Source: Styela clava (lineage: Eukaryota). From it: a stretch of DNA of 64,000 nucleotides. Below are positions 285 through 45,500 of this stretch, piece by piece. The notes under the pieces were generated by a model, which saw only the letters and a list, made by a program, of their open reading frames with translations, was not told the DNA's origin and did not search any database. A program made the translations under genes and the position numbers. Position 1 is the stretch's first letter; the number at the start of each line of letters is the position of its first letter. The stretch lies in contig NC_135250.1 of assembly GCF_964204865.1 (NCBI RefSeq), positions 6,758,001 to 6,822,000 on the forward strand, read 5' to 3'.

Positions 285-323
285 AAAAGTTACCGGTATA
301 TTTTAAACAGATAACAAAGTTAC

Positions 324-21500: not shown

Positions 21501-24500
21501 ACGCAAAGAGTTACGCACGATACGTCGCATGAACGTTATCACGACAATGTCGTCGTCGCCCTTTGCGTCCTTAGCAAACTTGGCGTCAAATAGTTGATAA
21601 ATTTTGTTTGCAAACCATTTGAATCGATAGTACAAATTCTGCAATAAAATGAGTTATGCGTATGTTAAGAAAGTCATACGTATATTCTCCGAAAGGTAAT
21701 TTTGTATACTTTTCAAAATTGTACTTATATTGATGATACATTTCTAAGAAATGTATTAAATATTACCAAAATACAAAAAAATAGTAGATGGGGCTACAAA
21801 TAGGCTTACACATCTCATCAAAACATCTCGTGAAAAATAATGCCAGTTAAAAATAAAAGACTAGATAAGCTTTTATATGATATATTACAGACCATCTGAT
21901 ATCTAATGGTTTAGAAGTTATTTTGATTTAAAATTAGGGATATTACAATTTTTTAACGCGTCAAATCGATGCGACGCCGTGGGAGGTCAGGGTGAGAGAG
22001 TAGCATCGTTCTGGGGATTCAGAGTTCAAAGAGTTAAAACTTATTATTGAGGCGAAGAAAGCCTTGAGAAGCCAGAGACAAAAGAAGCCACAAACCAAAT
22101 TAAAGAAAAAAAAACAGTGCAATACTACATACACATAAACCAATGTAACTACAGTAGTTGATAATCCGAAGCTTTATAAATATGTTACCTATCACATTAC
22201 TGATTGAATACCATATACCCATCTTCTCCCCAAAATAGGCATATACCATACTAAAATCTGAAAATTATAAATTCTACTAAATTCAACTTACCCATAAGAA
22301 TATGAAAGAACGCGGTGCATTCTGATAACATGGAGTAAAACATCATCACTCAACATCAGCCGAGTTATTGAATCTTGTGTTACTTGCCTATCTTCATTGT
22401 AATGGATGACATGAGCCTGAAAAGCCAAAAAATCATTTCATCATCCTTTTTTTGGCCTAAAATCTCCAATTCAGTCAGGTCAATAAGTGCACAGAATTCT
22501 TGGTATTGCAGCTAATCAGATTAAGCTAATTTAACATAACCAAGAAAGTCAATAACAGTTCAGTTAACATAGATAGTGGTTGCTTGCTTGAGCAGGTCCT
22601 GAATCCGAGATTTTAAACTTTCAGTCCACCACTGACCGAGACGAGGTCATCAGGCTTACATCAACAGGTTGATATTTGAAAATAGACAAAATCATATTAC
22701 CTGTAAATATTCATATGCTGCTCTCAATTCTGGTAATGGATAAAGTTTTACTTTGGTTGTTTCTCTTGTACTTGATGCGAGAGGTCTGTGGTGAACCTTA
22801 GCATCAACTGTAACAGAGATTTGGTATTTGAGTCCAACATCTACTCAAAGAAAGGTAACCAGAATAAAACTACTGATCTTTGACTTGAATTATGGGCGCT
22901 TGAACAAGCCCCAAAAGATGAAAAATTATAGCAGCAAATTGCTTTTTATTAAATACTGATTGACACAAGATTTAATATAATTCAGGTCAAGACAAATATG
23001 AAAACTGCTATGAGAAATCCAGCTTATACATATGCTCGGTGGTGTGGCCCATAGTGCTGAGCGTTAAGAATACGCTCGCCATCCTACCTCTGATTCGTGC
23101 GTGCGTTCGCAGGTTCGAATCTCATGCGGGGATGGTTATGTGCAAGAGGGTCGCTGGGTGGTTCACCCAACCGCTGGTCATACGGCTTCCTCCACCATTC
23201 AGTCCATTCTTGACATAGACAGGTAACCGGACGAGAGGTTGAGGTTCACCATATGATCAAGCCATCTTATTGGCCTTCCTCTCCCCCAGAATAAATATGT
23301 AAATCCCAAAAATGAACCACGTAATAACCTGCAAAGGTAGTAAAGTAGACTGGTGGAACTTCTGCATCACTTTTCCCATCTTCACCAGAACTTTGAATCG
23401 CATGACTAAAAAATTCTTTGGTAACGTTTTCAATTTCTCTTTCAAACCAGGCAAGATCAGAGGAACGACATAGTTGATCAGCAAAAAGTCGTTGCATTTC
23501 GTGTTTCCAGAATGCGACAACGTATGTTTCTGATGAACGGTTCTCCTCATCGACTCGTTTTAAACATTGACACATTTTTATAATTTGACGAAGACAGAAT
23601 GCATAATGTTGTCGGCCAGGTAGAGGACTATAAAGTATAAAAATATAAATGTTAATATAAATGTTTCGGGTTTATTTCCATGCCCACCCACCCAGGGTGT
23701 AATAAATTGGGTGGGTAACGTCAAATCAAACCCTTCATGAATAGTAGATCCCATCATATCGTTTGATATCAGTGCCTGATTGTACAGATAGAATGGAATC
23801 TTAAATAATGTAAGCAATATTCATACCTCGGTCTTAAAGCTTCCTTCAATTGTTCAAGAAGTTTACTGCAAGCTAGTGCAATTGATTCGTGAAGTTCCTG
23901 GGTTAGTGGTTTGTCAGACATGTTTGCTTCCAGCACTGAAAAAATGACATTGTGTACATCGGTTGATGACGCACTTCGAAGACGAAAAACAGCGAAATGT
24001 CGCAGCAAACGAGGATCAAGATTATTTCCAGGTGACGCAGCGTTTACAGACATTGTTGCAAGAACCTGTTAGCAAAGAACAAAAATTTTATTCAAGTGCT
24101 CATGAAAAATGAAGCCCAGGAACAAATAGTTTTATATTCTAGATTCTGCCTCGCAACTTAATCTACTTTTGATCATCCCCTTGGGAAAAATGTAGGTTAA
24201 GAGGAAGAGAGGAAAGCTGATGTGACAGCTCAATCATAATATGGCAAAACACAGCGTCTCATCCAGTTATGTCCATGTCTGGTACCAAAACAGTTTTTTG
24301 TTTCTGCTCATGAAACAAATAACTGGTTAGCTACTGTCATAAATGACATGGAATGGTAACCAGACGAGGGACAAGGTTAACCATATGATTACATCATGTT
24401 ATTGAATTTCTTATCCTCAAAGATACATATATATAATAAATTATATTCTATCCAACAGTGACTATTTTGAATAAAAATATTTCATTATTAAAAGAAAAAT

Positions 24501-27500
24501 AATAAACCCTCTGAAGCATAAAAATTATGAAATCTTTAAAACCCACCTCCAAACCTTCAACAGTTCTCCATTCAAATGGTTTATTCAGTTTACATATAGT
24601 TTGATCATCAACAAGAGAACGAAGCAATTCATTACATCTTTGTACGCCATCTATATCACATGACGGTAGATTCAAGTCATCAATGAAAGCCTGAATAGTA
24701 AAATATTGTTATCGATACAATTTCACCAACATAACTAGAAATAAACAGTTTCACGTCCCTATTCAGTAGTATGTATGTTTTTAAAGAAGTAAGACCTCAA
24801 ATGCTATATCTCGAATTAACAAAGTAGGAATAGCTGGGCCAATCCAGAAATCACATTGCCATATGTATCCGGGCATGGGATACATAAAACTTGATAATCC
24901 ATGCCAAAACAGTGAGATCAAGTTATTTTCACATACTACATAAAAGCTTGTAGAAATTCTACAAGGAAAACGGGATACTAAAATGTCTACGCATAGACAA
25001 TCATTCTATGTAACTCTCACTTGGGTATGGAAATTAAAAATTATGAACATTAATAGTTATAATACCTCTAGAAATTTCCCATCTCGTGCCCCATAAACAA
25101 ATCCTTGTCTATGTTGAATATTATGTTGCATGAAACTATGAAGTTGAGAAGCAGTTGAAGCTCGACTGAACACTAGACGTCGCAGAATACTGAATTGTTT
25201 GTCTGATAAAATTATAAAAATTATGTTATGTGGGGAAAGGTAACAATTTGAGGGCGGAGAAGTGTATCATACAGCCTGTGAAACCTAAATAGGTGGCCTA
25301 TAACAGAACGCATATTCCATTGTTTTCAAATACTTTTTCTTATTTATGCTGATACTATCAGCATTTTTGACTCTGTATAACGCCACATTAAGATGAAATT
25401 TTGTTTGGAGAGACTTCAAAAGCATACTGTCATTAAAATTTAAATTACTGCCTCTTGAAAAAAAGGATGTTAAATATATAAGAGGGAGGTTCGAATTAGG
25501 ACAAGTTCAACCTAATCAAGATTAGCTAATTATTCTTTATATAGTGAAAAAGCAGTTCAATGATTTGGTCCTCAGCTCCACTTCAATTTTACGTCTCACC
25601 CATTGCACGTTGTTCAGGGGATTGTATGCCGTCAAAAAAAAAGCGCCGGTAGAAGCAACCTTGGTCCTACCTTGAGTATCCAAAAAATCATTGACTAAAG
25701 CTGTTTTCCCGATTCCTGATTCGCCCACCACTAGAGTGTGCTTTCGAGCCATATGTGCAAAGTCAAGTAAACAACGAGTACGAATCGTATCGACAGTATC
25801 AACAAACACCTGAATATAACAAGAATGATATTTAAAAAACTCCATGTCCAAACTTTTACATGAATGCATGAAAATGTCTAAGCAGAGATGTTCATATCTG
25901 AAAAAGCTCGTAATGTTTTATTTATTGATATATATTATAGATTTTTATAAACATGAATATGAATGAAATGGTTTTCCATTGAGCTACATGAAATAGTAAA
26001 ACCAGTCAAGGTTGGTTATCAGAGCAGAAAATTTTAGGATGTTAAGCTTTTTCAGTTTTCATCATTTATTGTCAATTAACAGAGAATATTAGAATTTGCT
26101 GCTGTTATAGAGATAGTCGAAAGTTAAGCATGTGTTTGAGGACCAATCCACAAAAAAACTTTAAAACCGGTCCATAGTGTGAAAAGAGTATTGAATCCCT
26201 GTTTTAAAGGACATAAATATATGTCTCAATAATTATCTTCCTCACCTCTCCAAGCATGTCGGTTGTCCCTGTATAAGTAGCTTCAGGAACCCTAGCCATC
26301 CAAGTATCCCATTCACCTGATTCATCAACATAATAATCAAATACTGAAATATCATGGTCGTAATCTGGCAACCTAGAAAAAAGAAATATGAATATTTACT
26401 TATATATCACACATCCAGCAACCAAGCTGAACTGCTATATAATTTAGTTGCCTACATGTGCATTCCTCTATCTCAAGTTGAATATAACAATATATTCCTA
26501 CATTTGAAAAAACTTACGCAGATGACAATGTTCGAAGAAGATCACTGAATGTTTTAACAGTGTTTCCTTCCAGAAGTCCACCAAATGCCCAGACAAGACA
26601 AAACAAGTACAATCTCTCAATGTGAAGATCACCACCTGGAATTTTGAAAAAATTGTTCTTGTAGTATTTGTACTTCACGCCCAATAAATACAAGTATAAA
26701 TTCATAAAAACCAAGAAATCTCCAAGATATCTTACCAATATGTTGCTGATGCTCATTCAGCATTTCACCCAGCAATGTAAGACATGTTGTCAACAATCCA
26801 ACTTCACATACTGGAAGTTTTATCCTGGCAAAAATAAAAATAAAACAAATAGGAAACACAACAAAACCAAAATGATAATATTTATAAAAGAATTATTCTA
26901 ATTCAAGCAAGACCTTTGTATAGGCATTGTCATTGTATAACAAAATTCACAATAAAATCTACCTTTTATCATGGAAAACAAAGTTACAGACACTGTCTAA
27001 AGTTTTGTCGAATGCTTTTTCTAGAACACGTTTTTCATCAGCGTTTCTTTGTTCGAGCCAAGCTTTTGCAAGAGGACGCCAACCAAGAACGTTTTTATCC
27101 AGATAGACCAATCCCTGTAAAAATAAAAGTACAGTTGGATATGATGAGTATTAAAACACAAGGTTTACAATTACCATGTATTACAATAGTGTTATGATGC
27201 TATTATTTTATCTATTCCTCCTCAAAAAGAGTACTAAAATTCAGTCATTAGTCCTAGTCACTCACCGTACGAGACAGCAATGACGGAGACGCATTCCTCA
27301 AATCAGTTGTCTCAAATACAACTCTCATATTATCCGTGAGATAGAGTCGATCTCCATTACTCAGTTGCATGACTTTCTGATCAGATAATGCACCGTTGAG
27401 ACGATCAGCCCAAGAAGATACTAACGGACCATCAAGACAGAGCCACGTTGTACTTTGATTCTGCATAGAATAAATACATATGAATCATTAATAGGATGGA

Positions 27501-30500
27501 AATTTTGATAAATAAAATAAAACTAAAAATTTTCTTATTTCAAATATGAATATCCACAGTTAATCCTTGAGCAAAATCATAATACAAGAAACCTCTTATA
27601 TGTTGACCTGAAATGTTGAATTGAATTATTTGATAATTTATTTATATGAATTATTTTGAACTCTGCCCAACACACAAGGCAAACACACAGAAGGAAAAAA
27701 CTCCAAATGAGGAAATGGATATCTCACAGGTTCGACTGCTGTTAGAAATATGTGCGCAAAGATTTTTGACCATCCTTGCACTAGACTTGATGGTGGAGAG
27801 ACATAACCGAACAGCGGTTACTTGAACCACCTTATGACACAGAGGAGTTGGGAAATCCTCTCGGACATAATTATCCCTGCGGGATTCAAACCTGCCAACA
27901 GTCAATCAGAACGTGCAATGGCAAGCGTATTCCTAACCACTGATTCAGAAGATATAGCCATGAAATTCCATATTTATTATTTACTTACCCTGTTAGCTTT
28001 TCTCCAAGCATAAGTTAAAATACCATCTGACCATTCACGAGAGTTATTGGTTTGTCCGAACATCAAAGAAAGGTCATCGACAGTCAATGGGTGAAGTTTT
28101 TGCAACTTATGGTTCGACATGCCGGGGCTGATTGTTCTCCCAGCCCCAGGATTGTGGGGTAATTTACACAAAGCATCGATAAGTACAGAAAGCATGACTG
28201 ACTTCCCGCAACCTGCTGGTCCAGCTAAAACAACACCTTGTCTGGCTTCCGCTGTTTGGTATAACTGAGCAGCTTTAGATAACCAGTTTTGTCCAGGAAT
28301 GAGTCCCCTTTCATTTGCAACCTAGTGGTAAATGATATAAATATTTTTTTTTAAATTAGCAAATTTCACAATCATATTTATTCTGTGGGAGAGGAAAGTT
28401 TTTCTAACAGCATTTATTTTATTCATTTCAAATATTAAATCAAACATTATCTGATAGCATTTCTGTGGCAAGAATAAGCAAGCACAAATAAAGCCCTAGG
28501 CACATTGAAGGTCATTTCTAACTCTTCAGTACTGTTTTCCATTTTTGTTGAGGAATTGAGACCTCGATTTGAGTAAATGTGTAAAAATTTATTCTAGATA
28601 TAAATCAAGTTTGGGCATAGGAATAAATTGGGGCAATTATCTTCAATAATCGGGCACTTCTTACTATGAATTTCATGTCATATATTTTCATGACATAATT
28701 TTATATCTATTCAGCTTATATATGAAAATAATATCCAATCCTATTTGTCTATTATACATTGCTCAGAGCATTGTACCTCCGCTTTTGCCCTAGAAAGCTC
28801 ATTCATAAAAGCAAAAGCTATAGATGCCATACACAATATTGGGCACTCCGGTAATTTTTTTACCAAGATGACGAACAACCTGAACAACCCTAACATGGTA
28901 CACATACTATGTTCAGGTTGTGCGCCATCTTGGTATGAATACTTCGGGAGCATCCAATATTGTATGATGCTCTTCTGCAGGATCCAAATGCAAAAGTTTT
29001 ATATAGAATTAGAAATAAGTGCCTATTTATTGCCTTGTTCTGGGCGAAAGTATGAAGAAAAAAGAAAAAAAGTTGAACTGACATGTGTTAAAACTGGTTC
29101 CAAAATCTGTTCTTTTTTGCGAGAGCTTGCAGGACCAAAAGACAATTGTGTTTGAATCGGAGTTATTGAGTGACTTCCGGTAGCGGACATTGCACCAAGC
29201 AATTCTTTCACCATCGGAATTCCACTGAAAGTGTCTTTCAAGATAAAGTGAAAAACCACTGTATCAGATGGAGATAATCCTGGTGATATGGTCTCAATGA
29301 TAGCCTGAAATAAGAAAACAAAAAATGAACAATCAACAATACCAAACTGAATACTTTTAAAATAATAGTTTAATAGGATTTGAATTTAAAAATTCTATGA
29401 ATTCATGTTACATAAATTTACTTTTTGACAAAAATCATGATGATATTTATGTGCCAAGGCTGTAACACTGAATTTAATGATTTGTAAAAATAGAATATTT
29501 GAAAAAATTATAAATTTTCACAGAAACCCATTTGTATTCAAATAATATTTTTGAATTTTACAATACAATCTAAATTGATTCTGATGTTGACTGCCCTAAC
29601 TGGATATATATTTTGGGACAAAATTTTTATTTCAGATAATTTTCAAATATAAAAACAAATATGACAAGATAACTGAGAAAATGAAACTTCTATAAAAAAT
29701 GAAACATTAATTTAGATAAGCTGCATTCGTGAAAAGTGCTCCTTTATTGCATATTGCGTTTGTTGTCAATTTTAGCCTGAACTGAATTCTTTGGGCATCA
29801 TGATATAGAAATGAACAGTCTATGTTGACTAGTTGTTTTGATGAGAACCCCTATATTTCTGTTATAATCTGTTAGTTAAAATCTAGTCGAAAAAGTGTAA
29901 ATATTTCCAAATTCTACATCTTAATAAAAAGTTTACCTGAGCAACAAGTCCGTGGTCAATTTTAGCCTGGCCTGTTAATGTATTCGGCATATTAGTCTTT
30001 TTTCCAATCAATTTATCAGAAACAGCTGCTTGAGGTCGGCTCGGCACAGCTACTACAGGTGACGGTGGTTGTCTAGAAGTGTTCAAATAGGTTGTTGTTG
30101 TATGTTAGTACGTATTATAAATCAAATTCTCAAAAACATACTAAAAAAAATGATTACTGTGTGAAAAACTGGAGCTTTTTATTAAAAAGAATTTTTTCAA
30201 AGCCTACTCATTTAAAAGTAAAGGAGACTCTTTTTTGAGCAAGGTTACAGGCAATCACTGAAGTGCCGAGAGCTGAAGAAACTATATAGATTTATGGTGG
30301 TGCATTATCATGTCAGCATATATTACTTGACTTGAGATATATTACTTGATACACTTGAAGAAATTCACAAGAAAAACAGCTAAGAGGGAGTGACACAAAT
30401 GAAGTTCTGGAAAAAAAATGTGCTCCTGTACATAGTCTGTGGGTATGAATCCTGTGAATTATTGATATTCTCCTGTCAACAAGATATTGTTCACCTAACT

Positions 30501-33500
30501 ACTATAAGCTGTCGTCTGCTCTTTCACACATTTTTATTAGAATATGAAATGTTTACTTGCTTAGATATTCACATCCAACTTGAAGTAGCAAAATGACACA
30601 ATGTCGCAATTGAGCATAAATTATACCCATCTTATAAACTTTCCTCTCATGGGAATAAGTACAATTCCTTATTCAAATACCTGACAGAAGTTTGACTGTT
30701 TGATCTTGACAATTTCTGTTGATCAATTTCAGTTCTTGAGCCTGTTACTGTATCAGATCGAGATATAGCTTCAGAACGTTCATCCTTTGAATAAAATAAA
30801 AAGTTGAATTAGATTTGAGATCAACTGAATACTTCTGTGGTATATTCACTTGTCTAACACAGATAGTCCCTGAACTCGTAATACAACTAAAATAAAAAAA
30901 AATCAGAAAAAAATTATGGCCTAACCCTAACCTGGTACACACACTACGGGAGTACCATCAGCTTGGGATTGCTTCTGCATATTGTGGCACGGTCTTTGAA
31001 TAGGATAACAAATTTTCTCCAATCTTATAATATTTGTGTGTGAGCTACGTTCGGTACCCTTGTTACGCATTCATAATCAGTGTCACAGAGCGTCGAGCCA
31101 TTGACTCGACTCGAGTTGGACTTGAGTCAACGTTTATCAAACACTCAAAGTTATGTGAGTTAACTGGTAACATTTCTCATACCCAACATGGACAGGTGAC
31201 CTGATGAGGACCCACAGAGTACTATATGTTTGAGATGTTTTATCGTTTTCTCTCTCATAACATAAAAATAAACAAAACGCCTATTCAGAATGTTAGTATT
31301 CAGCTTAATTCAATGATAAATATGATTTAATCACATACCCTAGCTTTACGTTTCTGTGCTGCCAATGTCAAGGCAGAAAGCAATGACTGCAATGAGACTT
31401 CATGATGTTGAGATGAAGATCTAGGCAATTGTTGGTGTGACAATTCAACAAGTGTTTTCAGTCTATCTGCAAGAGCTTTAGGCGATCGTAGACCGAGTGC
31501 AGTACATTTTGCTTTCAATATTGCGCTCATATCTGGTTTGATAATAGACACTGTCCGATAAAGAGACCTAAGAATGAGTGAATAAAATGTAGAATGGTGT
31601 GTGTAATGGGCTGGTAAGCTTTCCTCAAACAGATACAAAGTCCTGTCCAGGTGGCGTCTTTTACAGGAAAAAAATTTAACTTTGTATTTGTGTAAGGCAA
31701 CATTTCCAGCAACCCAGCCAGTAATCATTATTATATTTTCTCACCATCATGAAAATACGCTTTGCACAAACAATGAAAAAAAACATAAAAATGACACTTC
31801 AAGGTGAACGGGGGGACGCAAAAATCCAATACTGGTTAACAAGCAGCAAATTTTTATCATCTTGGGGGGGAAATGGGCTTTATATTTGCTGTAAATAGCA
31901 ATACTCAATGTATGAGTACTTTCAATGCATAGTGAGGAAGAAATAGAGAGTTCTGAAATAAGCAAATGCAGGAATTTAATGAAAAAGGTTAGGAACCACT
32001 AGTGTAAGGTAATACCTATACCGTATTCTTATTGAATTATAAACTGTCCGAACTGTACAAAAGCGTAAAGTGCGAGTCGCTCAACACTGGCTAATGTAGT
32101 GACTCATTAAAAACGAACCCCTATTTTCCCAAGGTGCCAATTGGGAGGGCAATGAGAAAATTGAAGGTTCCCAGTCCTCTGAAAATTACCTGATCGCAGT
32201 TGGTAATGGTTTAAAATGTGGAGCTGATGGATTGTATGTGATGAACATAGCTGATCCTGGATTAACTAGATTGACTTGAGCATCATTGTCACCATAATTA
32301 CTTGAATCTTGTCTCTGTAAAATACAAAAATTTATTTAATAATTGAATTATACTCATAAGATGATGGATGGGTACAAGCTTGATACAGATGTTCATTTTG
32401 GTTCATCAATCAACACAAAATGGATACATGAATAAAGCAACTTGAGGGAATACTAATAAAGCTAATATAAGAGTCAGATTAAGGCTTTTAAGGATATTAA
32501 TATAATCCATTTAAATAAAATGTGGTCCAATTTTTAAAATTCTGTTAATTTGATCAGGCATAATCATATTCTTCTTATTGGTAATTAAATTATCACAAAT
32601 ATCTACAACAAACCTTGAAATCAATGATCTTCTGCATTGATGAAAAGATCTTGTAACTGAATTCTAAGATGACAGAAATACCACTAGGTGACAGTAGATG
32701 CACATCGTCAAGGCAACCCCAGCATCCATCAGCAGCTAGGCCCTGTGATAACAATTTTGTATATTTGTAGTTGGGATGTATCAGTGGTGATAGCGTTATA
32801 CCTAATTGTGGGGATTTGCAGCGTCACCCTAACTGGTTTAAATTCTATACTAATTGCCCCCACCCAGGTTGAATTTTAGGGAGCATTCCATATACGACAT
32901 TTTCAATGTGTGGAACTTTCTGAGAGATGTTTTTTATTACTGGGAATTTTGTAGGTTAAATTAAACTTTGAACTTCTGAATACGAACCTGTAGTATTTTT
33001 CCCAGTGATGTAGCATCAGTAGATCGTGTACAATTGATCATGAAAATATATTTTCCAAACAAACTTGCAAGACCCATAACAGTTTCTGTTTTTCCACTAC
33101 TGGCATTGCCCACCACTGCAGAACCCTGAGAGGAAAAAAAAAGAAAATTGATCAATTAGGATAAGAAGAGGAAGAATTAAATTGAATAGAGCATGATTGG
33201 TAGAGGGAGTCGCAACAAATCAGTCTGGTAAAAGAACCACTTTGTGATGAGCCCATGAGAACCTTATCAAATAATTAGTAGCATCAATAGTTCTGCACAA
33301 CCAAAGCCTTATTCAGAGTGATAAAGTGAAGCACAATATTAAAATACATACTTGACATTGAGCGAGTGCAATTGACATGCTGACGAAAGCTCTTTCTGTC
33401 GCAGGAGCAATCACTAGATTTGCAGATGACGATAAGCCGTAGAATTCGAGTCCGTAATGAAACTGGTTATCGAGTATATGAAGGTTATGTTCTTGGAATC

Positions 33501-36500
33501 CATCAACATCCTCAGAATAGAAACGAATACTTCGGCGCCATTCAAAATCACCTAATAAAATGGTGAAAAATTATTTCCTCACTGTTTTAACATTTCACAA
33601 TGTACAATGTGGTAATTTTTTGAATAAATTTCCAATAACCCAGAATTTATGTACCGTAGGTAATTTCATAGGTCATACGGTAAGTCAATTTGGTATTCTA
33701 ACAATTTGGTATTTTGTTAATACAAAACTGTGATTAATTTTGATTATATATGCAATATAAACGATTTTATACATATATATATATTTTACAGTAAAATCAT
33801 GATGCATAATAATATAACATAAGTTTGGATTTCGCAAAAGGCTTAAAAATTTTACAGAAGAAAAAGCAAACTTTATTACGAACGATATTTCTAATTTTCT
33901 AGCGTAAAAACACCTTTTATAAGTATATTCAATTCAATAAGCCAAATTACCTTAGCTGAATCAGAAGATTCATATTCTTTATACAAAGACAAGAAAAAGC
34001 CTCATAAAAATGGATTTTGAAATCCATTCTGTATTGGCAGTCAGGCCTGATTTTAAACCAATGTTTACCTTCTCTTTATTATCTCTTTTGTGTGTTTGTT
34101 GTGAAATATAAAAAAAATTCTTACTTATGTCTCTCATTTTTCTTGAACCCATTCCGTCCAATGAATCTCGTAGATGGACGGAGTAATGAATTAAATTTTC
34201 CAATCTAGCACGATGCACTGGTAACATTGCTTCATCTCCACCCTTCCATGTTGTGCGATTGATGACTGTAGGTAGGCTGTAAATAAGAATGCAAGAATAA
34301 ACTATAAATACAAAAATCATGCTGTGGTTGTTGTCATCACAGGATAGGATTTTCCTGATCAACCAGTGGGGAGGAAAACTGATAAGATGACATTACGCCA
34401 ATCGTCTGGTTACCAGTCTGTCTGTTATCGTCTGGTCCATGTCTGGTATGGGAATAGAGATTGCTCATTACTAAAGGAGTCGTTTATAGCATTTGCAGAA
34501 TGTCATGATTTTGGGAGATGAATTGAAAACATAGTTTTAATACACCCTTGTCAGAAAAATTGACCCTGTTTATAATGTTGAACTTTGAAAAAGTATCAAG
34601 AAAATTTTTCATGATTGAAAATGCCCTTGTTCATGATGAATTTAAACTCTAAAACAATACAAAATGGAAATTTATGCTTTGGTGCTACATTCCCCCTAAG
34701 AGCTAAGGTTAAAATATTTTTTACATAGTCGATGAGATAGCCGTGTATCACAAGATTGCTGTCGACCTAGCTGTTACAAGGTATTCCACACACACAACTA
34801 ATGGTCAGTTATGACTTTTTACAACAACCATATCAATGCATCTGAAACTTGGAAACAAAAACGGGACAGCTATTTTGATATGATGACCAAAACTAGATAA
34901 GAATCTGTGGTGACTGTATTAATAGGTCAGCAATCCTTTCCCCTAAATAAAATCTGTTACAGGACTCATAATAAAATTTCTGTTTTCGCCAGGGTGTGAT
35001 CTAGATATCTTGTCATACTTACCGAGATATCATCACAGAAAATTTTTTGCTTGCATTTTGCATTGCTTTTCTTTCCCATTTCAACTCAGCAATTCCTGCT
35101 TCACATTCACGAGTCCATAGGTATAGTAATGCCAATTTTCCAACTTGTATAGGGTATCTAGAATTGAAAAGCATCAAATGCTATAATGTTGAAAAAATAG
35201 ATTTTTTTAAGATTTTTCACTCCAATAAAGACTCAGTTAAAAGCAGTCCTGATAGGGAAAAATCTGTAATTATGGAAGAAATCGGAATCTGTTTGAGAAA
35301 CCATATACTAGGTCATTACGCCCACTGGAGGTCCACATTCAAAGTTCAGAATTCATTTTAAACTATTCATTTCATTTCAACTTCCTTTTCATAAATTTAT
35401 AATTAATGAAAATGTCCAATTTTGAAATATGCTTTAAGACTAGAATTGACATAATTTGGCATACTTGAGCACAATTTCTTCTAGTGGAGTATTTGCATCA
35501 ATATCAGCAATTGCTTTTGTGATATTAGAATGTAACGAGCGTCGTACAGAATCCTGCAAGTTTTGAAGCCATAATTCTGCTCCTTCAAAAAGACTGATCT
35601 AAAAAATGAATATTATTTTATTCAAAAGGTAGTTTTTTTGTTTAAATCTTGCTGTATGGAAGACTATCTGAAAGTACCGTACTAGATTGGATGAAACATT
35701 TTTTGGTTTTCGTGAAGCCTATCCAATTTACAACATTGTAGGTAAGATATATAATAGACTCCTCCAAGCAAAAATGAAGATCATAGTAACTTTCCCCACC
35801 AATATTAACAACAGTATGTGTATGTTAACACACTTTGTGCGAGGGCTAACTTGAAAATGTTAGTACCTCAATTGCTACCTATATTATGTCTTTTTAATGA
35901 ATACCTCATCATCTTAAAATTGCAAAAATTAATTTGAAAAAACGAGTACTACAGAACAATACCTCTTCATCTAAGTTCAAAATTTCACCATCCGCTGCAA
36001 GCACTGCAGTTGCATGCAAAACATCAGCAGGTTCTTCTGCATAACTTGCAGAAAAATGTAAGCTGTCAGATGATTTCATCCTCTGTAAAATCAGTCAACA
36101 AAGGATGATAAAAAAGTAAAAGATGATGACCTATATAGTTGATAATTTTTATGACATGTGTTATATCTGCTCTGAACGAGACTCTGTATAAGCAGTCTCT
36201 AGGATATGGAAACCCTTTTTTGGGAAGAACTGGGATTTCTCGTACACTCATTACATATTTTATTGTGGGCAACATCGAGTGTTAAGTTGAGAACATATGC
36301 AGCCGCGGGACCTAGACTGTATAAAGTGGGTAAATACATTCCATACTTACCGATTTAAATCTTACTCCTGACGCTCTGTGATGAGCATCTTCATTTCGAC
36401 GCTGAGTTTCTGGATTATGTTGAAGAACGGGGGACGAATCTGGTGTGGGAGTGTTGCGTAAAGATTTCATTGAACTAACAGTCTCAGACCAACTCCCAGT

Positions 36501-39500
36501 TTTCTCAGTTTTAATATCAGCAATGCTCGCAAAAATCGATCTGTAAAATATGATCATTTTTTATGATCTCAATCATGGATGAAATCATATACAGTAATTT
36601 GTTTAGAAATGGTCAACCAATGTTGGAGGAGTTAGTCTTTGCATCTTTAACTATGGGTCATGATTATGTCATGTCAGGCATGAAAGGGGGACTCTTTACT
36701 CTCATGAGTTAGTTGCGATATTTCTCCAGCCAAAACTAACTAAGAAATCATCCTATTTTGACACAGCCTTGCCAATGGAATAACTATTTTCCAATAAAAT
36801 TGACTATCTAATAATAGCAAAAGTATGAAAATTATTTCTTAATGTAATGATTCAATAATGTTGAAGCATAATATGATCACAGCCATGATCAATGAATAAT
36901 GATAACAAATTTTTGTCATGACAGTACAGCAATATCAAAATATAGAAATGCTTTCCTACCTCAAATGTGTTCGGACGGATTCCAAATCATTAGGTCGAGA
37001 CAATACTGCCAGTAGAACGGAGTCAGTGAGGAAATGGAATCGTGGAAACACTGCTCGTTTTTTGTCAAGATATTGAGTCAAACTTTTGAAGCAGATTTCT
37101 AATTCTTCTTGCATATGACGAAGAACAACATCTTTTGGAACTTCACCTGTTTTGAAGAAACAAATTATCAAAAATTAGTTTGAGCAAGTCTTGCATCACA
37201 GGTTAAAATCTTGGGTTCAAATCCAATGCCCAAAAACTCACCCATAGTGTAAAAAATTAGGAGGCCAATGCGGTACCGGATTAATTTCATTCCATCCCTA
37301 CTAGGAACCGTTACATGTCATGAACTATTTCGTGATAAATTCATCTTGAATAACTTTCACTTTATTGATAAGATTACAGCTATTTTTATCTCATTGTTAC
37401 TAAAATTCTCGATTATTGAGAATTTTTGTACTGTATTTTTCCAAAAATTAGGTTTTCACTTCCTAATTATTTCTGTGACAGTGACGATTATTCATGATCC
37501 CATATTTGAAAATAAAAGTAAATACTCACCCCCATAACAACATTGCAGAATATTCCTTGTATCATAGGCTCTTCTCATCAGTTTTACATAACTTTTATCA
37601 ACCATAGAAAATCTTTTTGCTTCTTGAGGGAGTTCTTTCGCTGTGGCATGGTCTGAGAACACAGCTTCTAATTCTTGCCAGAGATCTTGCGTTTCCAGCC
37701 ACGTATCGAGAACTTCACTGACACCTTTAAGTTTTTCAGCCCACGATGCAGCTTCTTCTCTAAGCGGCCCTATTGAACATATTGTTTTTTTTTAATATCT
37801 TCCAAATGTTGGACTAAATACACTAGGATTGCTAGTTCTCCGAAAAGACGATCTCTTGCGCAGATGGTCATATTGACCAACTCCAACCCAAATTTGTTTG
37901 ATTCAAATTGCCAATATTTTACTCGATATTCTTCATTTTTTAATATTTTTAATATTTATAGGCAGAATATTATAGTAACTTAACGGTAGCAAACAATAAT
38001 ATTCTGGAGGTACAAGCAAAATTGTGTAATTTACCAATATGCTTTGAGGTCAGCATAGTGGCCAACAATGCTTGAGCATCTTCAAGAAGTTCTAAAAGCC
38101 TTTCTGAATCTTCTTTAACCAACAACACAGGTCCTCTTCTCTTGTAGTTTTCAAAGCTCAGAACCTATAAAAGTAATGATTTAAAAATATTAATGTCACT
38201 ATTTCTATTATCAAAACATAGTAAATTCTAATCAGTTCATTTTCGGAAAGACCAATTGGGCCGATGATTATTCTTTGTGGGCAAAGAATGCCACTATTTG
38301 ATAAGGTATAACTTTGTTTGCATATTATAAATAAAAGCACATTGGTCTGTTCTAAATCAAGTTTCTAAAATCATGCCAGATCGACTCTTGTTCAATAATC
38401 TTGTACACAACCACACTGAGTCAAGAATAATTTGAGATAATTTATACATGCCTGTTCAGTCCATTCTTCTTCAATTCCTCTCATTTTTACTTCAAGTTCA
38501 AGTTCTTTGTTTGCAGCATTGCATATCTGCTCAATTTCAGCACTGTGTCTAAATATAAAAAAAAGTGGACTCAGCAAAGACCCTTGAGGCATACCATTAT
38601 TTTTATATTTTATCTTACTCAAGAAGTCCAATGTCCAACAAATGTCCCATTTTAAAGATGTTTGATTCAAGTTGGAATTTACTGAAGGTGACAGACATAA
38701 CTTGAAGCCAATGACGGTTTCGTATTTTCTGTAATTATGATAAAAAATGATGAAAATACCAAAAAGTTTAATCACAATGTGTATACCTATATCAGAGGTG
38801 GGCAGCCCCTGGTACCAAGTTTGGCACGCAAGCTCATTTATTTGGCACGTGAGCAAAGTCTCGGAAACGAGATCATTCTTTTTCGGATAAAAAGTTTCAA
38901 GACTTTGAAATATCTGGTGAAACTAGGTGTTCGTTTATTTATTATCGTTTGTTAACAATCCGTTATTTATTTAAACTCCTTCTGTCCTTTCATGACATAT
39001 GGCTACAAGGAAATATATTATTACGTCAGAAATGGGCGAGTTCTCGAAAAATTTTGTCAAGAAGAGCGCAGCATTCATTTGGCAACATTCTCACGTAATA
39101 TAGTTTGTCTGTGCCCCCCTTTTCTTCATTCCTGCTTAATTTATGAAGTTGCACAGCTCATGTTGGTTAGGGTTACTTGCTAACTTACTGTTATAAATTG
39201 ATTTCGAGAGAACGATAAGCGATTAGAAAAGGGAATACAAGAGAGAAGTGCAGATAACGAACTATTGCGTGATTGGGATACCACTCCCAAAAATTTTTCG
39301 TGTCATAAAAACTCGTCAACTGCATTACTTTACATATTTTCATCTACATATGCTTGTGATTTTCTGTTCTCAGTTATGAAAGATGAAACCAGTAGTTCAA
39401 GTATTTCTCTGAAAGTTACAAAATATAAACCCAATGTAAAATCTCCATCAGCTGTAATGTAGCAGCAGAAGTCTCACTGATATAAAATAAGGAAATCTAT

Positions 39501-42500
39501 TTGTCGGACTGATATTTTACCGAATAGTGGATCTGTCTGTACGTTTTTAAAAGGTTTATTATTGTGTATCTTTGCTTTGAAATTGGCAAAGCATTGCTTT
39601 TAATTTTGGTGGGCACGTGAAAGAATTTTGTTGGTAAATTTAGCCGATTTTGGCACGCGAGCCGTAAAAGGTTGCCCCCACCTGACCTATATACAGGGTT
39701 GCCATATCGTGCTTATTTCTAAGATTTGTGCTTATTTTCTAGCCCGCGTCTTATAAAGTAACGATGTGCTTATTTCTAAGAGAAGTGCTCATTTTTGAGT
39801 CGCGTGCTTATTTGGTCTTGGAAACGTGGATAACCAGTTCTTGTTTTGCGTACAAAGCTTGCGTGGAAACGAGGGACAAACTTTTTCTGTCAACCGTGGG
39901 GTTTGCGGTATTTCCAGGCAAACTATGACACACACAATAGTTGCTGCTAGTTTTCAGGAATACTGTTTTTAGGGACAAACTGCAATTTAGAGTAAGCGTA
40001 ACTATGAGTTCTGTTTCGAACATGAAAAGAAATTTTCTATTAACTACTGCTAGTGCGACATCGAGAAAGGTGGAAAACAGTAGGTGCCCACAATACTACC
40101 ACAAAACACAAGAAGTATTGCGGGAAACCAAAATATGAAGACTTTAGATCAGAGGTCGGCCACCTGCGGGCCATATCCGGCACGCGGAGTAAAATAATTC
40201 GGCCCACAGTGTTTCACTTAAACCTACGGATCGTTATTATATATGTTATTCTTGTTCTTCATTAATAATTCGTTTTCCCATCGTTATGAAAAAATCGCTT
40301 CTGTTTTCAATTACTTAACGAAAATAAAATTTTCCTCGCGAAGAACTATAAGATTAGTGATAGACATTTAGAAAATGTTCTAATTTTGGTTTTATTTAGG
40401 GTATCACCTAGTGTCGCACTAAATGTTATTTGTAAATATTTTGCATAGTAAGACGACCTGAGTCCACGAGTTGTCGCAGTGTTCGCTCGCTATTTGAAGT
40501 CTGAAATTTGAATTTCTATTCTGTATAAATAATGTGGTTCATCAGCCACCCGTTCAGTTTTTACCTTTCTTGAAAAAATATGTGCGACCCGCCAAGATTC
40601 GTAACACTTGGTTTTGGCCCGGGAGCGACAAAAGATTGCCGACCCTTGCCTTAGAGCAGTGTTTCCCAACCCGAGTCCGCGGTCTCAAATGAGTCCGCAG
40701 AGCCTTTAAATGAGTCCGCAACGAGTCAGAAATTCACTGCGGGCCGCAAACGTTTTTGCGAAACTTAATTAACTATCAGCCAAGTTGGGATTTGCGTTAG
40801 AGTTTACAAAAAAAAACATAAAAAGTCAGTTTATTCACATGACATTAATCGCGTCAATAATTACTGGTTACTGAGTAGGGCTGGGCATATATTCGAATAT
40901 TCAACTATTAGAATAGCACATTTACGAATCGAAAATTTGATAACACGTGACGCGACAGGTCACTTGCGAGTCGCTTAAGCGATTGGATTTCACAACTCAC
41001 TTGTGGATTTCCGACGAAAACAAGAGTCTGTACACGCTTCGATAGATTCGTAATAGGTGTTTCTCGCGAGTTCGAACAACGAGGCATAAATTATTTTTCT
41101 GGTAGGTGTAAATTGTGGCAACCCAAATTTTCTAAATTGAAGAGCGGTCCGCGAGCGATTAAAAACGCTTTTTTAGACATTGCAAATCGCAAAATTTCGG
41201 GTGCTACCATAGTACACGTACCAGGGCATTTTCCTTTAGGATTCTCTGCTTTACTGACTCCACTTTAGTAATGTCGCACAGTAGTAATGTCGAATTCACA
41301 CAGATTTGTCGATTCACAAAGATACGAATCAAAACAAGATATACACTTTACCACGCATTTTTGCGTCCACGGATTGTCATGATATTTTCTGAGTAGTATT
41401 GCTCTCATTTCGTCAACACAACCGTATATAAAAAGAACCACACATGTGGATGGATTGAATATTTTATGCAACAGAAAAAATCATTGAAAAGTCGGCTCTT
41501 TAACGAGTGACGTATACGCGACTTACTTCAGAAGTTGTTCGCGAGAATTTCAAAGTGATGAAAATGTATTTTCGATTTACTAATATATATACTTTAAATA
41601 TATTTTTAATAAATACTAAATTAACTTGGTATATTCTGGAAACTTATAGCAGATAGTATAATTTTTTCTAACAGCGATAACAAATTCACAAGATCGCAAA
41701 AAATATGTATCAAAGCTGAATATAATCAGGCAATATATTCTCTCATTATTATGTTCGCAGATGGCAGTGGAAATTTTTTAAAAAGTGAACTTTTATCTTA
41801 TCGTAAGTCGACGCTACCGCAAGTTACCAAGATGAACACAAATAAATTAAAATAGAAAGACATTTCAAATTCTCGTCGTTGTCATGGATTGAATACTGTG
41901 CGACAGAAAAGTCCATTATATATATATACACCAAAAAAGTCGGCTCTTTTAACGAACGCGTAATTGCGGCGGATTTCCGATTTTGAAATACGTTAAATTT
42001 CTGTTGTGTTTGGTTTTATTGCTTCTTCACACAGAATACGGTTGCAATAAACGCACCTTGAGTCCGCAAAGGTTTTCGCCGGTGAGAAAATAGTCCGCGA
42101 CCAAAAAGGTTGGGAAACGCTGCCTTAGAGATTGCGTGTGACAGTGTCTTTCCATAGCTTTTTGCGATTTTGGAACTGCGTACAACCACGTTTGAAGTGA
42201 CTTCTAATGACAAAAAGTGGGAGACTCGTGTATGATCTCCTTCCTATTCTGCGTTTCTGCCGTTGTTAAGACGCCTCCCCTTGAAAAAAATAACATTTTG
42301 ACGCCCGTGCTTATTTTTGGCACTGGGTAGATGGCAACCCTGCCTATATAGTAACTAAAAAACTACTAACCGGTATCATGATGTCTTTAAACTTTCCCTG
42401 CAAAACAAGGCAAAAATGTTAGATTATTCTCAAAACACTTTAGATTGAAAATTAAAATAAAAAATATTACAAATTTGAACGAAATGTACATTTCCAAATC

Positions 42501-45500
42501 TTCATATAATAAGAAACATCGGAATAGACTCATACTAGAATTAATATGATTCACCATCAAAGTAATTTAAATACCTTTTCAGCCAACCGATGCAAGAGTG
42601 GGAAAACATTCAAGTATGTTTTAATGCTTTTCTTCATTTCTGTGTATGCATCCCAATCCTTTAACTTGTCTGGAAGATTCAAACATTCATCCCAATGCCC
42701 ACGAACCTTTGAAAATATAATATATAAATGGTTGTTTACAGTTGATTCATCAAAGGAGAGATTAAAAATTTTAGGATATGACCATGCAAAATGATATTCA
42801 AAGTATGATTGATGAGTTAAGCTAAAGTAATTTCACAAAACACATTAACTAGAATGAGATTTTGTAGTGTGCAACTGTATTAATATTATTATGATGGCTT
42901 CGCATGTGTTAACCAAGTGAATATACTCCCTGCCCATAGGTTCTAGTCCCTTTACACAACTTGATGTAAAGTAGTAAAAAAATTAGTAACCTCCATATTG
43001 GTACATACACTTTTGGAGCGCCAAATTTTGTGCTCTTTTCACGTTATACACATCTGAATAACATTTCTCAAAGTTGTATTGGGATATCTAACCAGTTCTA
43101 CTTAGAAATTTCAAATCTGATCATTTGTTCACCTCAATATTTGCTGTATGCAAGCCTGCATTTTCCCAGAGTGTATCTCGGAATCTTCTATCAAAAGCAA
43201 TGAACTTTTGAAACAATCCATATAACATCCCAAGAAGTTTGAGTTCTTCTCCAGTTTTGTCAAGTTCAGGAAAAGGTTTCGGAAGAATCCCAAAAAGTCG
43301 CTGGACAGAATCGAGCGTTTTTCTCTTTGCATCATAAAGAGTAAATCTAAACAAGAATACTCAAAATTAGTGCCAAAAGAATCACTAGTTTTAAAAGTAC
43401 ACTTTTGCATTAGCACAGTAGTGGAACACAAAAATTTTTGAAAATAAAATAAAAATGTAGAAATAAATTAGTTGTATTAATTGTAAAAACATGGTACGAA
43501 AGGTAAAAAAGTAAATGATTGCTGACATCAAACGAAATTTAATTTGTAATTTCTTAAGCATGTAGCTTCATGAAAAGAATATATAGAGAGAATCAGATAG
43601 TGAATACAATAAAAGCATCCCAAAAGCAACACATTGAATAAAACAATTCAGAAAAAGCGTATAAGAAATTACAACAGTGGTGTGCAATGCATGCAAAAAT
43701 GTAAATGTGATGTGACATTGGGAAATATGTTCCCAATATTATAATTTCCTCGAAAATTCCTTATCTATTCATCAAAAATGTGCCGTTTAGCATGAACAAT
43801 ATTTCTTGAGTTTAGGAATGTAATTATGAACATTACATATATAACATTCCAAATTTCACTCATTGAAATTTTCCTTATAAATTTTTGATAAAATCCTAGG
43901 GGAGAGACGAATTATGAGATCATTTTAATCATCTGGTGAAACCAGGCCATCTCGTTTGGTTACCAGTCTATGTCGGATATGAGAATTAATGTGCATGTTC
44001 ACACAAAAATTAGCAAGCAACAAAGGTGAATTGATTACAACCACACAAAAGAACATGTTGAATGTGATTCTGCATAAAATAATATAAATATTGTGTGTGT
44101 GTGTGCTAAGCAAAACTCTCAGGCAAACAATATGTGAAATAATAGGTGAGTGCAATAAGTGATTGTGCATGTGACAAATAACACACACAAACACACTTAC
44201 GTTTTGTAATCTGCAAATAAATGTGATATTGTATTAAAATTAAAAAAATATATATATTTATGCCAGTAATTTTACCGTATATCATAAACAAGTTGAAAAA
44301 AAGATAAATTAAGGAATGTCCAAATAATTCAATTTTATTGAATACAAAAATATTTAAATTTGAAAATCCTTAAAATTAGAGTATTTAAAAAAAACATTGA
44401 GCTATGATTATGTGAAGTAAAAAATAATATTGAACTCATTGTACATAGACCTTAGAAAAGTTGGGTTCCCAATCATCACAAGACAGCAATATAAGTTTTA
44501 TCAAGTACATCACTACTCTAGCTTTCGTTCCGCTACCCTATACCCATTTTTTCCACCCAAAGTTTTTGAATGATTTTTCATTAACCCTTTCCGTGCGGTG
44601 GGCACGTATACGTACCAACGACAAAAGTCGCTAGATTGCGGTGGGTACGTTAGTGTACTCCACTGTTTTATTTAGCAATCGGTCGAAACTGTCGGTCTAG
44701 TTTTTCCGGGTTTTAGTTTATTGATAAGAAGTCTTCTTCGAGATTACCATAAGCGACGGTAAATCTCGCTTTCGTTTACGACGGGAATTTTATTTGCGGC
44801 GGAACGAGGGAGTGTTTTTGAAATTTATGCAAATTCCGGTGTTTTTGGGGTGGTAATAGAAGACATATTATCCCTTCCATCTACCAAAGTATTTTGAGTT
44901 AGATCACGAAATTGCTACAGCAATATTATGCTATTGTTTGCAAACCACGAAGCGGTAACAGTAAAGGATTTAGCAATTATTTCTATTTTTTTATAACGGT
45001 TTGAAGTTTCAACTCCCAAGAAAAAAAAATGCCTTTTTTCTATCCGGTTTGTGACTCAGACCACCACTTTTGAAAAAAACTTTTTTTTTATTCGCCAATT
45101 GCAAGCTCTTTAAATAAGCTTTCCAACGAGCCATCAGTGGGCAGCAGAGGATCAATAGTTTTTCGTTAGTCGATCGATTAGTTGTGGGGGTACAAATGCA
45201 TAAAATCGGCGTAGCAAATACGAATATTTACTAAAAAATAAAAATCGCATGGAAAGGGTTAAACATATATTCCATTTTTGGCCGCTTCAAAAGTATGTGT
45301 ACCAATATGGAGTTAACTAATTTTGTTCAGCCACTCCACATCAAGTTGTGTAAAGGGACTGAAACGTATGGGCAGTGGGTATATTTACTTGGCTAACACA
45401 GACAGTTCCCGAACTCGTAATAGAACTAAGAAAGGGAAAATCGGAATAAAATTATGGCCTAATCCTAACTTGGTACACATATTACAGAAGTACCCATTTT

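What the first reader, a model, noticed from the sequence alone, without database searches (positions are those of the whole stretch)
31339..33551. AAA1 catalytic site degenerate: Walker B E to D and sensor II R to Q
Seen: Walker A GNASSGKTET (consensus GPAGTGKTET; K and T kept). Walker B WGCLDDVHLL (codons GAC GAT near 32704-32709; consensus WGCFDEFNRI). Sensor I FITYNPSAPHF (consensus FITMNPGYAGR; N kept). Sensor II region QHHEVSLQSL (consensus HYDFGLR). N-loop NLVIAPATER (consensus RLVITPLTDR). Known: these are among the most invariant dynein motifs; the Walker B Glu is the catalytic base and the sensor II Arg contacts the nucleotide phosphates. Inference: the site may bind nucleotide but hydrolyse poorly or not at all.
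Basis: partly seen in the sequence, partly recalled or inferred. Interest (0 to 1): 0.85.

Follow-up and report, generated by a model that had tools for sequence, protein, structure and literature searches.

The report
Sea squirt DNAHX: dead motor site
These exons encode the main ATP-burning pocket of the sea squirt's copy of DNAHX, a sperm dynein described in 2025 as non-motile. The catalytic residues are truly missing, as in its relatives in other animals, so the finding is real but already explained.

Summary
Five minus-strand exons (33551-31339) encode a dynein AAA1 module with Walker A GNASSGKTET, Walker B DD (GAC GAT, 32709-32704), sensor I N kept in a remodelled loop, and sensor II Gln (CAG, 31389-31387).

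The gene is the Styela clava orthologue of DNAHX. [quoted passage not shown] (bioRxiv 2025.01.18.633724) from sea-urchin XP_041462850. It is not a degenerate ordinary outer-arm dynein, a pseudogene, or DNHD1.

The window's exons match public model XP_077973667 (5,416 aa) exactly. That protein sits inside the DNAHX clade (SH-aLRT 100). It carries every DNAHX insertion: AAA4S PS2i, stalk CC1 and CC2, two in the MTBD, and a long tail.

- Across 98 DNAHX proteins the binding residues persist: Walker A Lys 97/98, Walker B Asp 82/98.
- The catalytic residues do not: Walker B Glu 43/98, sensor II Arg 5/98.
- All 92 other dyneins keep both catalytic residues.
- DD is shared with a second tunicate and all sampled vertebrate DNAHX.

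The likely mechanism, inferred from the urchin cryo-EM, is that AAA1 holds ATP without turning it over.

No read, cDNA or structural check was possible. This is a new member of a known kind, of modest interest.

The parts
306..63598 (-). DNAHX gene body within the window. It covers residues about 286-4931 of the 5,416-aa Styela clava model XP_077973667. Both gene ends lie outside the window.
   Evidence: 87 collinear minus-strand tblastn pieces, near 100% identical in exon cores. 55-62 collinear pieces at about 50% identity to DNAHX of other phyla.
33352..33551 (-). AAA1 exon A: N-loop NLVIAPATER. The canonical TDR is TER here.
   Evidence: N-loop Asp-to-Glu occurs in 92/98 DNAHX, against Asp in 90/92 other dyneins.
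32988..33125 (-). AAA1 exon B: Walker A GNASSGKTET, with Lys and Thr kept (K2289 and T2290 of the model).
   Evidence: Pfam AAA_6, E 1.3e-9..
32614..32742 (-). AAA1 exon C: Walker B WGCLDDVHLL. D2335 is kept and D2336 replaces the catalytic Glu (GAC 32709-32707, GAT 32706-32704).
32190..32314 (-). AAA1 exon D: sensor I FITYNPSAPHF. The Asn is kept. The loop Tyr and Arg of canonical NPGYAGR are replaced.
31339..31567 (-). AAA1 exon E (small subdomain): sensor II HHEVSLQSL. Gln (CAG 31389-31387, Q2468) replaces the Arg.
   Evidence: Pfam AAA_6, E 1.8e-10. phmmer alignments..
27989..28321 (-). AAA2 exon with an intact Walker A, GPAGCGKS.
27266..27463 (-). AAA2 exon carrying the Arg aligned with the canonical ATVSR arginine finger that faces AAA1 (R2813; SLLSR).
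   Evidence: Calling it the arginine finger rests on general AAA+ knowledge, not on a structure of this protein.
19828..20040 (-). AAA4 exon whose Walker A has lost the Lys (GAVGSHLS against canonical GVGGSGKQS). The loss is family-wide in DNAHX.
14522..14707 (-). Exon encoding the DNAHX-specific AAA4S pre-sensor-II insert (PS2i). It is 43 aa in the model (3583-3625) and 41 aa in the urchin.
   Evidence: 41-51% identical to the urchin and starfish inserts. The insert block is absent from five canonical outer-arm alpha chains.
12751..12903 (-). Exon with the acidic stalk CC1 insert (model 3754-3787, 34 aa; urchin 33 aa).
11655..11876 (-). MTBD exon with the basic insert (model 3854-3899, 46 aa; urchin 32 aa). 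Its position matches the pre-H3 insert of the paper.
   Evidence: The helix assignment is inferred from the paper's description.
10810..11025 (-). MTBD exon with the second insert (model 3970-3999, 30 aa; urchin 39 aa).
8883..9197 (-). Region encoding the acidic stalk CC2 insert (model 4062-4097, 36 aa; urchin 22 aa).
   Evidence: The exon borders here were not refined.

Best explanation
The five exons encode AAA1 of the Styela clava orthologue of DNAHX. DNAHX is an old duplicate of the outer-arm alpha heavy chain (the DNAH5/DNAH8 type) that has become a non-motile dynein.

The pocket keeps what is needed to hold Mg-ATP. It has the Walker A Gly-Lys-Thr, the first Walker B Asp, the sensor I Asn and the Arg contributed by AAA2.

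It lacks what is needed to split ATP and release phosphate. The Walker B Glu is Asp, the sensor II Arg is Gln, and the sensor-I loop Tyr and Arg are gone.

AAA1 therefore most likely binds ATP as a standing ligand and turns it over very slowly or not at all. That would keep the motor in the bent, pre-powerstroke shape. The AAA4S insert that clamps the C-terminal cap and the insert-disrupted stalk and microtubule-binding domain point the same way.

Shown here: the sequence facts, the orthology, the shared insertions, and the conservation pattern. Inferred from the urchin cryo-EM and from general AAA+ enzymology: ATP retention, lack of hydrolysis, and the locked conformation in Styela.
For: Identity of the gene:
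- The window matches XP_077973667 of Styela clava exon by exon, and the five AAA1 exon peptides are exact and contiguous in it.
- P0105 is XP_041462850, the type DNAHX. The residues the paper names (V2221, S2322, T2324, K2393) are at those positions.
- The Styela protein pairs with the tunicate Clavelina (SH-aLRT 100). Both lie inside a clade of metazoan DNAHX (96-100) that contains the type and is separate from canonical outer-arm alpha chains. This is a 514-column tree of the linker, outside AAA1.
- Three of four single-exon trees made from the window's own exons agree, at 98-100.
- tblastn sum scores against the window are about 1,500-4,000 bits for DNAHX members (fragmentary models at the low end) and 590-970 for canonical DNAH5/8.

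Shared anatomy: PS2i, CC1, CC2, both MTBD inserts, the tail inserts and a 25-aa C-terminal insert sit at the same alignment positions as in the urchin.

Conservation of the site in 98 DNAHX proteins against 92 other dyneins:
- Walker A Lys: 97 against 92.
- Walker B Asp: 82 against 92.
- Walker B Glu: 43 against 92.
- Sensor I Asn: 38 against 91.
- Sensor II Arg: 5 against 92.

Further support:
- AAA1 identity is 81-87% between animal outer-arm alpha chains but 38-55% between DNAHX. The DNAHX linker is 57-83% identical.
- Published cryo-EM shows ATP in AAA1 and only pre-powerstroke particles for the urchin protein.
Against: - No experiment or structure exists for the Styela protein.
- Asp in place of the Walker B Glu keeps a carboxylate, so residual slow hydrolysis cannot be excluded from sequence.
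- DD is fixed in both tunicates and all sampled vertebrates. That argues the position is still under some constraint.
- The source paper is a preprint, and I could not see its figure comparing AAA1 motifs across the subfamily.
- The trees were quick searches with SH-aLRT support only.
Confidence: 0.8

Rival explanations
1. AAA1 is a slow but genuine ATPase. The Asp at the Walker B Glu position still activates water, and DNAHX in tunicates and vertebrates cycles slowly or under regulation instead of being locked.
For: A carboxylate is retained. DD is invariant in two tunicates and all sampled vertebrate DNAHX, which suggests constraint. Walker A, the first Walker B Asp and the AAA2 Arg are kept in Styela.
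Against: - Sensor II Arg is absent, and its replacement varies freely between lineages: Q, P, S, A, K.
- The sensor-I loop Tyr and Arg are gone.
- AAA1 is one of the fastest-evolving domains of the protein.
- The urchin orthologue keeps DE yet holds ATP unhydrolysed.
- The PS2i clamp is conserved in Styela.
Confidence: 0.12
2. The gene is a decaying pseudogene or a dying duplicate of an outer-arm dynein, and the motif changes are neutral wreckage.
For: Several normally invariant motifs are altered at once. AAA1, stalk and MTBD are poorly conserved.
Against: - 87 exon matches show no reading-frame break, and a 5,416-aa model exists.
- Orthologues of about 5,100-5,650 aa occur from sponges and placozoans to amphibians.
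- The linker is 83% identical between two tunicates and 71-72% identical to amphioxus and urchin.
- Nucleotide-binding residues are kept selectively.
- The urchin protein was purified from sperm axonemes.
Confidence: 0.03
3. It is an orthologue of DNHD1, the other known dynein heavy chain with a degenerate AAA1, or a lineage-specific oddity unrelated to DNAHX.
For: DNHD1 is reported to lack the catalytic Walker B residues. This was my first guess.
Against: - The gene groups with XP_041462850 at full support.
- All named relatives found from the AAA1 exon are DNAHX members.
- The nearest solved chains to the family are outer-arm gamma / DNAH5.
- The DNAHX inserts are shared position by position.
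- No DNHD1 sequence was in my trees, so the exclusion is indirect.
Confidence: 0.02
4. The odd residues are an assembly or annotation artefact, or a canonical alternative exon is used in vivo.
For: No reads or cDNA could be examined.
Against: - Three public gene models from two annotation rounds contain the same AAA1 block.
- Clavelina has DD, and all sampled vertebrates have DD.
- A six-frame scan of the whole window finds no exon with DE-F/V-N or G-L/M-R.
- All five exons have canonical splice sites and compatible phases.
Confidence: 0.02

Closest known systems
DNAHX, type protein XP_041462850 of Lytechinus variegatus (Chai, Suchenski Loustaunau, Zheng, Yang, Zhang; bioRxiv 10.1101/2025.01.18.633724)
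   Same: - Same clade.
- About 50% identity over about 3,460 aligned residues.
- Length above 5,200 aa.
- The same insertions in tail, AAA4S (PS2i), CC1, CC2, MTBD and C-terminal region.
- N-loop Asp to Glu.
- Sensor II Arg lost.
- Sensor-I loop remodelled.
- Walker A Lys-Thr kept.
- AAA4 Walker A Lys lost.
   Different: - The urchin keeps the Walker B DE, and Styela has DD.
- The urchin sensor II is Lys, and Styela has Gln.
- The urchin Walker A has Val where canonical dyneins have the first Thr (GPAGTGKT), and Styela has Ser there and another Ser in place of the preceding Gly.
- Styela keeps the sensor-I Pro that the urchin lost.
- Tunicates are not named in the text of the paper. A search of its text for 'tunicate', 'ascidian' and 'Ciona' found nothing.
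Vertebrate and other tunicate DNAHX orthologues (for example Rhinatrema XP_029452717, the Xenopus tropicalis protein annotated 'dynein gamma chain, flagellar outer arm', Clavelina XP_076801378)
   Same: Walker B DD followed by H-L-L. Sensor II is S-L-Q in most amphibians and the coelacanth. Walker A G-K-T-E-T is kept.
   Different: Vertebrates have also lost the sensor I Asn and, in amphibians, the AAA2 Arg (Lys instead). Styela keeps both. Clavelina has Pro, not Gln, at sensor II.
Canonical outer-arm alpha heavy chain (DNAH5/DNAH8; Chlamydomonas gamma)
   Same: Sister family. Same overall domain order. The closest solved structures to the family are 7kzm_C and 8j07_n0.
   Different: About 36% identity. 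No DNAHX inserts. A Pfam MT stalk domain (PF12777) is detected in the canonical chains but in none of the DNAHX proteins listed. All AAA1 motifs are invariant. Three outer-arm-alpha-type loci with intact motifs exist elsewhere in this genome.
DNHD1 (orphan dynein heavy chain of mammals)
   Same: A dynein heavy chain with a degenerate AAA1 that lacks catalytic Walker B residues. It has disordered inserts and a proposed role in flagellar assembly rather than beating.
   Different: The authors describe it as not homologous as a subfamily, with inserts at other sites. The Styela gene groups with DNAHX. DNHD1 itself was not aligned here.
Dynein AAA2, and other AAA+ sites that bind but do not hydrolyse ATP
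   Same: Works alike: P-loop Lys and Mg-binding Asp are kept and the catalytic Glu is absent, so the nucleotide acts as a structural ligand (general knowledge of dynein).
   Different: That is a different module of the ring. Here the change has happened in AAA1, the site that normally drives the powerstroke.

Membership tests
DNAHX subfamily | Groups with the type protein XP_041462850 to the exclusion of canonical dynein families | tested here: met
   In the linker tree the DNAHX clade including the type and the Styela protein has SH-aLRT 100. Single-exon trees from window exons give 98-100 in three of four. The accession was verified.
DNAHX subfamily | Nearest canonical family is the outer-arm alpha chain (DNAH5/8) | tested here: met
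   The outer-arm alpha clade is next to the DNAHX clade. The best PDB matches of a family member are outer-arm gamma (Chlamydomonas) and DNAH5.
DNAHX subfamily | Unusually long heavy chain (above about 5,000 aa) owing to many insertions | tested here: met
   The public Styela model is 5,416 aa, against 4,495-4,698 aa for five canonical chains. 23 insert blocks of at least 10 aa were found, most shared with the urchin. The window itself holds residues about 286-4931.
DNAHX subfamily | Pre-sensor-II insert (PS2i) in AAA4S | tested here: met
   Window exon 14707-14522 is 41-51% identical to the urchin and starfish insert. The block is 43 aa against 41 aa and is absent in canonical chains.
DNAHX subfamily | Insertions in both stalk helices (CC1 and CC2) | tested here: met
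   Model residues 3754-3787 and 4062-4097 sit at the same alignment positions as the urchin inserts. The predicted fold-back of the stalk was not modelled.
DNAHX subfamily | Two disordered insertions in the MTBD (pre-H3 and H5) | tested here: met
   Model residues 3854-3899 and 3970-3999 are shared in position with the urchin. Helix names are taken from the paper and not checked on a structure.
DNAHX subfamily | AAA1 catalytic motifs not conserved | tested here: met
DNAHX subfamily | AAA1 holds ATP and the motor is locked pre-powerstroke | not testable with these tools
   Known only for the urchin protein by cryo-EM.
DNAHX subfamily | Partners with a second heavy chain in the dynein-X complex of sperm | not testable with these tools
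   No expression or interaction data were available.
DNAHX subfamily | Occurs in animals that shed sperm into water | not tested
   Styela clava is a broadcast-spawning ascidian by general knowledge. The organism identity is supported.
Canonical outer-arm alpha heavy chain (DNAH5/DNAH8) | Falls within the DNAH5/8 clade and has invariant AAA1 motifs | tested here: not met
   It falls outside that clade. About 36% identity. Motifs differ at positions invariant in 92/92 dyneins.
DNHD1 | Orthology to mammalian DNHD1 | not tested
   No DNHD1 sequence was retrieved. Exclusion rests on the positive placement in DNAHX.

The most novel reading that the evidence does not exclude
The dead AAA1 has a history that the DNAHX paper does not describe.

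- The sensor II Arg was lost once, at the base of animal DNAHX.
- The Walker B Glu decayed later and repeatedly. The linker tree needs at least six changes.
- In the line leading to tunicates and vertebrates the Glu became Asp and then froze for over 500 million years.

A frozen DD beside a freely varying sensor II would mean selection for a pocket that must hold Mg-ATP but must never split it. In other words, ATP would serve as a permanent structural cofactor of a pseudo-motor.

The DNAHX line may also predate animals. A Chromosphaera perkinsii dynein is sister to all animal DNAHX. It keeps the sensor II Arg and a recognisable stalk domain but already lacks the Walker B Glu.
Probability: 0.3. 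Interest if true: 0.45.

Novelty: new member of a known kind. Interest (0 to 1): 0.3.

Why it matters
It shows that the striking 'de-motorised' dynein in this ascidian belongs to DNAHX, a family recognised only in 2025, and extends that family to tunicates.

It gives a numerical picture of how an AAA+ motor site decays. Binding residues are kept in 82-97 of 98 proteins. Catalytic residues are kept in 5-43 of 98. AAA1 goes from the most conserved domain to one of the least conserved.

Ascidians such as Styela and Ciona offer abundant sperm and tractable genetics. They could be used to test what a non-moving dynein does in flagellar assembly.

For the scan, it is a caution. A high-interest 'broken invariant motif' can be a family trait that the literature already covers.

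Tried and rejected
Hypotheses set aside:
1. DNHD1 orthologue was my first reading. I dropped it after the representative search and the trees.
2. An alternative canonical exon. A six-frame motif scan of the window found none.
3. A pseudogene. The intact frames and deep conservation argue against it.

Tools that gave nothing:
6. The PDB copy holds no DNAHX chain. The preprint lists placeholder accession codes.
7. A search for earlier classification of this family led nowhere useful.

Full report
**What is in the sequence**

The window is AT-rich animal DNA, with GC of 0.30-0.38 over most of its length. It carries one very large gene on the minus strand.

In the flagged interval, five open stretches have canonical AG/GT borders and compatible phases:
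- exon A, 33551-33352
- exon B, 33125-32988
- exon C, 32742-32614
- exon D, 32314-32190
- exon E, 31567-31339

The GAC GAT codons lie at 32709-32704 and the sensor II Gln codon CAG at 31389-31387.

**Which dynein it is**

I first guessed DNHD1. A literature search then turned up Chai et al. 2025 (bioRxiv 10.1101/2025.01.18.633724). They describe DNAHX, a heavy-chain subfamily that split from the outer-arm alpha chain.
- It is over 5,000 aa long.
- It has inserts in both stalk helices, two in the MTBD, and a pre-sensor-II insert (PS2i) in AAA4S.
- Its AAA1 motifs are degenerate.
- By cryo-EM, AAA1 holds ATP and the motor is locked in the pre-powerstroke state.

A search of 1.8 billion representative proteins with exon E returned only relatives of this kind. 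The named full-length hits are 'DNAH8-like' or 'outer arm gamma-like' proteins of amphibians, bichirs and amphioxus.

Word-index searches from those proteins brought in about 100 family members, from sponges and Trichoplax to frogs. Among them is P0105, which is XP_041462850 itself. V2221, S2322, T2324 and K2393 sit where the paper says.

The same searches returned P0214, which is XP_077973667 of Styela clava. It matches the window at essentially 100% in 87 exon pieces. It contains my five exon peptides exactly and contiguously at residues 2212-2484.

The public model served wherever a spliced protein was needed.

**Placement**

tblastn of family members against the window gives 55-62 collinear pieces for full-length DNAHX. 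Sum scores run from about 1,500 to 4,000 bits (fragmentary models at the low end) at about 50% identity. Canonical DNAH5/8 give 590-970 bits at about 36%.

Trees built on single window exons put the window inside the DNAHX clade at SH-aLRT 98-100 in three of four cases.

A 514-column tree of the linker, a region outside AAA1, gives three results:
- Styela pairs with Clavelina at 100.
- Both lie inside animal DNAHX (96-100), together with the type protein.
- Canonical outer-arm alpha chains are separate.

The Styela protein has the PS2i (window exon 14707-14522, 41-51% identical to echinoderm PS2i). It also has the CC1, CC2 and both MTBD inserts, the tail inserts and a 25-aa C-terminal insert. 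All sit at the same alignment positions as in the urchin.

In the tables, none of the DNAHX proteins has a recorded Pfam MT-stalk domain (PF12777). The canonical axonemal and cytoplasmic chains in those tables do.

**Are DD and Gln shared?**

Yes, in part. The motif tables are and the counts.

| Residue | 98 DNAHX | 92 other dyneins |
|---|---|---|
| Walker A Lys | 97 | 92 |
| Walker A Thr | 88 | 92 |
| Walker B Asp | 82 | 92 |
| Walker B Glu | 43 (Asp 43, Asn 10) | 92 |
| Sensor I Asn | 38 | 91 |
| Sensor II Arg | 5 (Gln 31, Ser 19, Lys 13) | 92 |
| N-loop Asp | 5 (Glu 92) | 90 |

- DD occurs in both tunicates and in every vertebrate DNAHX sampled.
- Amphioxus has DN.
- Echinoderms, hemichordates, most molluscs and the anthozoan cnidarians sampled keep DE.
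- Acoels, rotifers, octopus, a sponge and Clytia have harsher replacements.

On the linker tree the sensor II Arg needs two changes, one loss and one regain in Bufo. The Walker B Glu needs at least six.

[quoted passage not shown] Three of those genes are of outer-arm alpha type. No alternative exon with canonical motifs exists in the window. All three public models of the gene share the AAA1 block.

**How it most likely works**

The residues that hold Mg-ATP are kept. These are the P-loop Lys and Thr, the first Walker B Asp and the sensor I Asn. The AAA2 Arg aligned with the canonical arginine finger is also kept.

The residues that catalyse hydrolysis and gate phosphate release are gone. These are the Walker B Glu, the sensor II Arg and the sensor-I loop Tyr.

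Domain-by-domain identity makes the same point. AAA1 is the best conserved domain of canonical outer-arm alpha chains, at 81-87% between animals. In DNAHX it is the least or nearly the least conserved, at 38-55%. The DNAHX linker is the best conserved, at 57-83%.

With the conserved PS2i clamp and the disrupted stalk and MTBD, this points to a scaffold-like dynein whose AAA1 holds ATP without turning it over, as seen in the urchin.

The urchin keeps DE and is already locked. The Glu-to-Asp change in Styela is therefore better read as later decay, or hardening, than as the cause. This paragraph is inference. Nothing was measured for Styela.

**Rivals**

- Residual slow hydrolysis by the Asp cannot be excluded. 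The fixed DD in tunicates and vertebrates hints at constraint.
- A pseudogene, DNHD1 orthology, or an artefact is each unlikely, for the reasons given in the rival entries.

**Limits**

No read, cDNA or neighbouring-species locus check was possible.
- The model exceeds the limits for Pfam and folding and cannot be cut by reference, so no pocket model was made.
- The trees are quick searches with SH-aLRT support only.
- DNHD1 was not in the trees.
- The key paper is a preprint whose figures I could not see.

**Verdict**

It is the expected state of a family described in 2025. What is new is modest:
- a tunicate member;
- the DD state shared with vertebrates;
- counts of motif decay across about 100 orthologues.

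It is a new member of a known kind, with interest about 0.3.

Noticed in passing
window 19828-20040 (minus strand): The AAA4 Walker A of DNAHX has lost its Lys in every family member aligned. It reads GAVGSHLS in Styela and GAIGSHLT in the urchin, against canonical GVGGSGKQS. The Walker B Asp is also gone. AAA2 and AAA3 P-loops are intact. A term search of the DNAHX preprint (AAA2, AAA3, P-loop) and the sections I read do not discuss this.
   Followed up: partly
P0244 (Chromosphaera perkinsii, 4,537 aa) and P0246 (ENA metagenome protein): A dynein of a unicellular relative of animals is sister to all animal DNAHX (SH-aLRT 100). It keeps the sensor II HYDFGLR and a Pfam MT stalk domain, but its Walker B reads D-A. 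The DNAHX line may be older than animals, whereas the paper reports it from sponges upward.
   Followed up: partly
window 62311-63184: A 31-nt minisatellite with 28 copies and 81% matches lies in the intron between exons 63598-63389 and 62042-61794. It causes the GC and GC-skew jump at the window's end.
   Followed up: partly
G000:C5:15088394-15089419 (L001): Another dynein heavy chain of this genome lies in a 4,311-aa open frame without introns and has fully canonical AAA1 motifs.
   Followed up: no
G000:C13:148676-461857 and G000:C9:9532101-9536941: There are several weak AAA_6 matches (26-40 bits), repeated on contig 13, and one further weak locus on contig 9. They could be other divergent or fragmentary dynein-like genes.
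   Followed up: no
P0054 (Bufo gargarizans DNAHX): This is one of five DNAHX rows with Arg at the sensor II position (S-L-R), and the only one among those in the linker tree. On that tree it reads as a regain.
   Followed up: no
window about 29937-30790, between exon E and the AAA2 exons: The Styela protein has 29-, 40- and 29-aa insert blocks after AAA1S (model residues 2476-2504, 2518-2557, 2594-2622). The first two are shared in position with other DNAHX, and the third is long only in the two tunicates.
   Followed up: no
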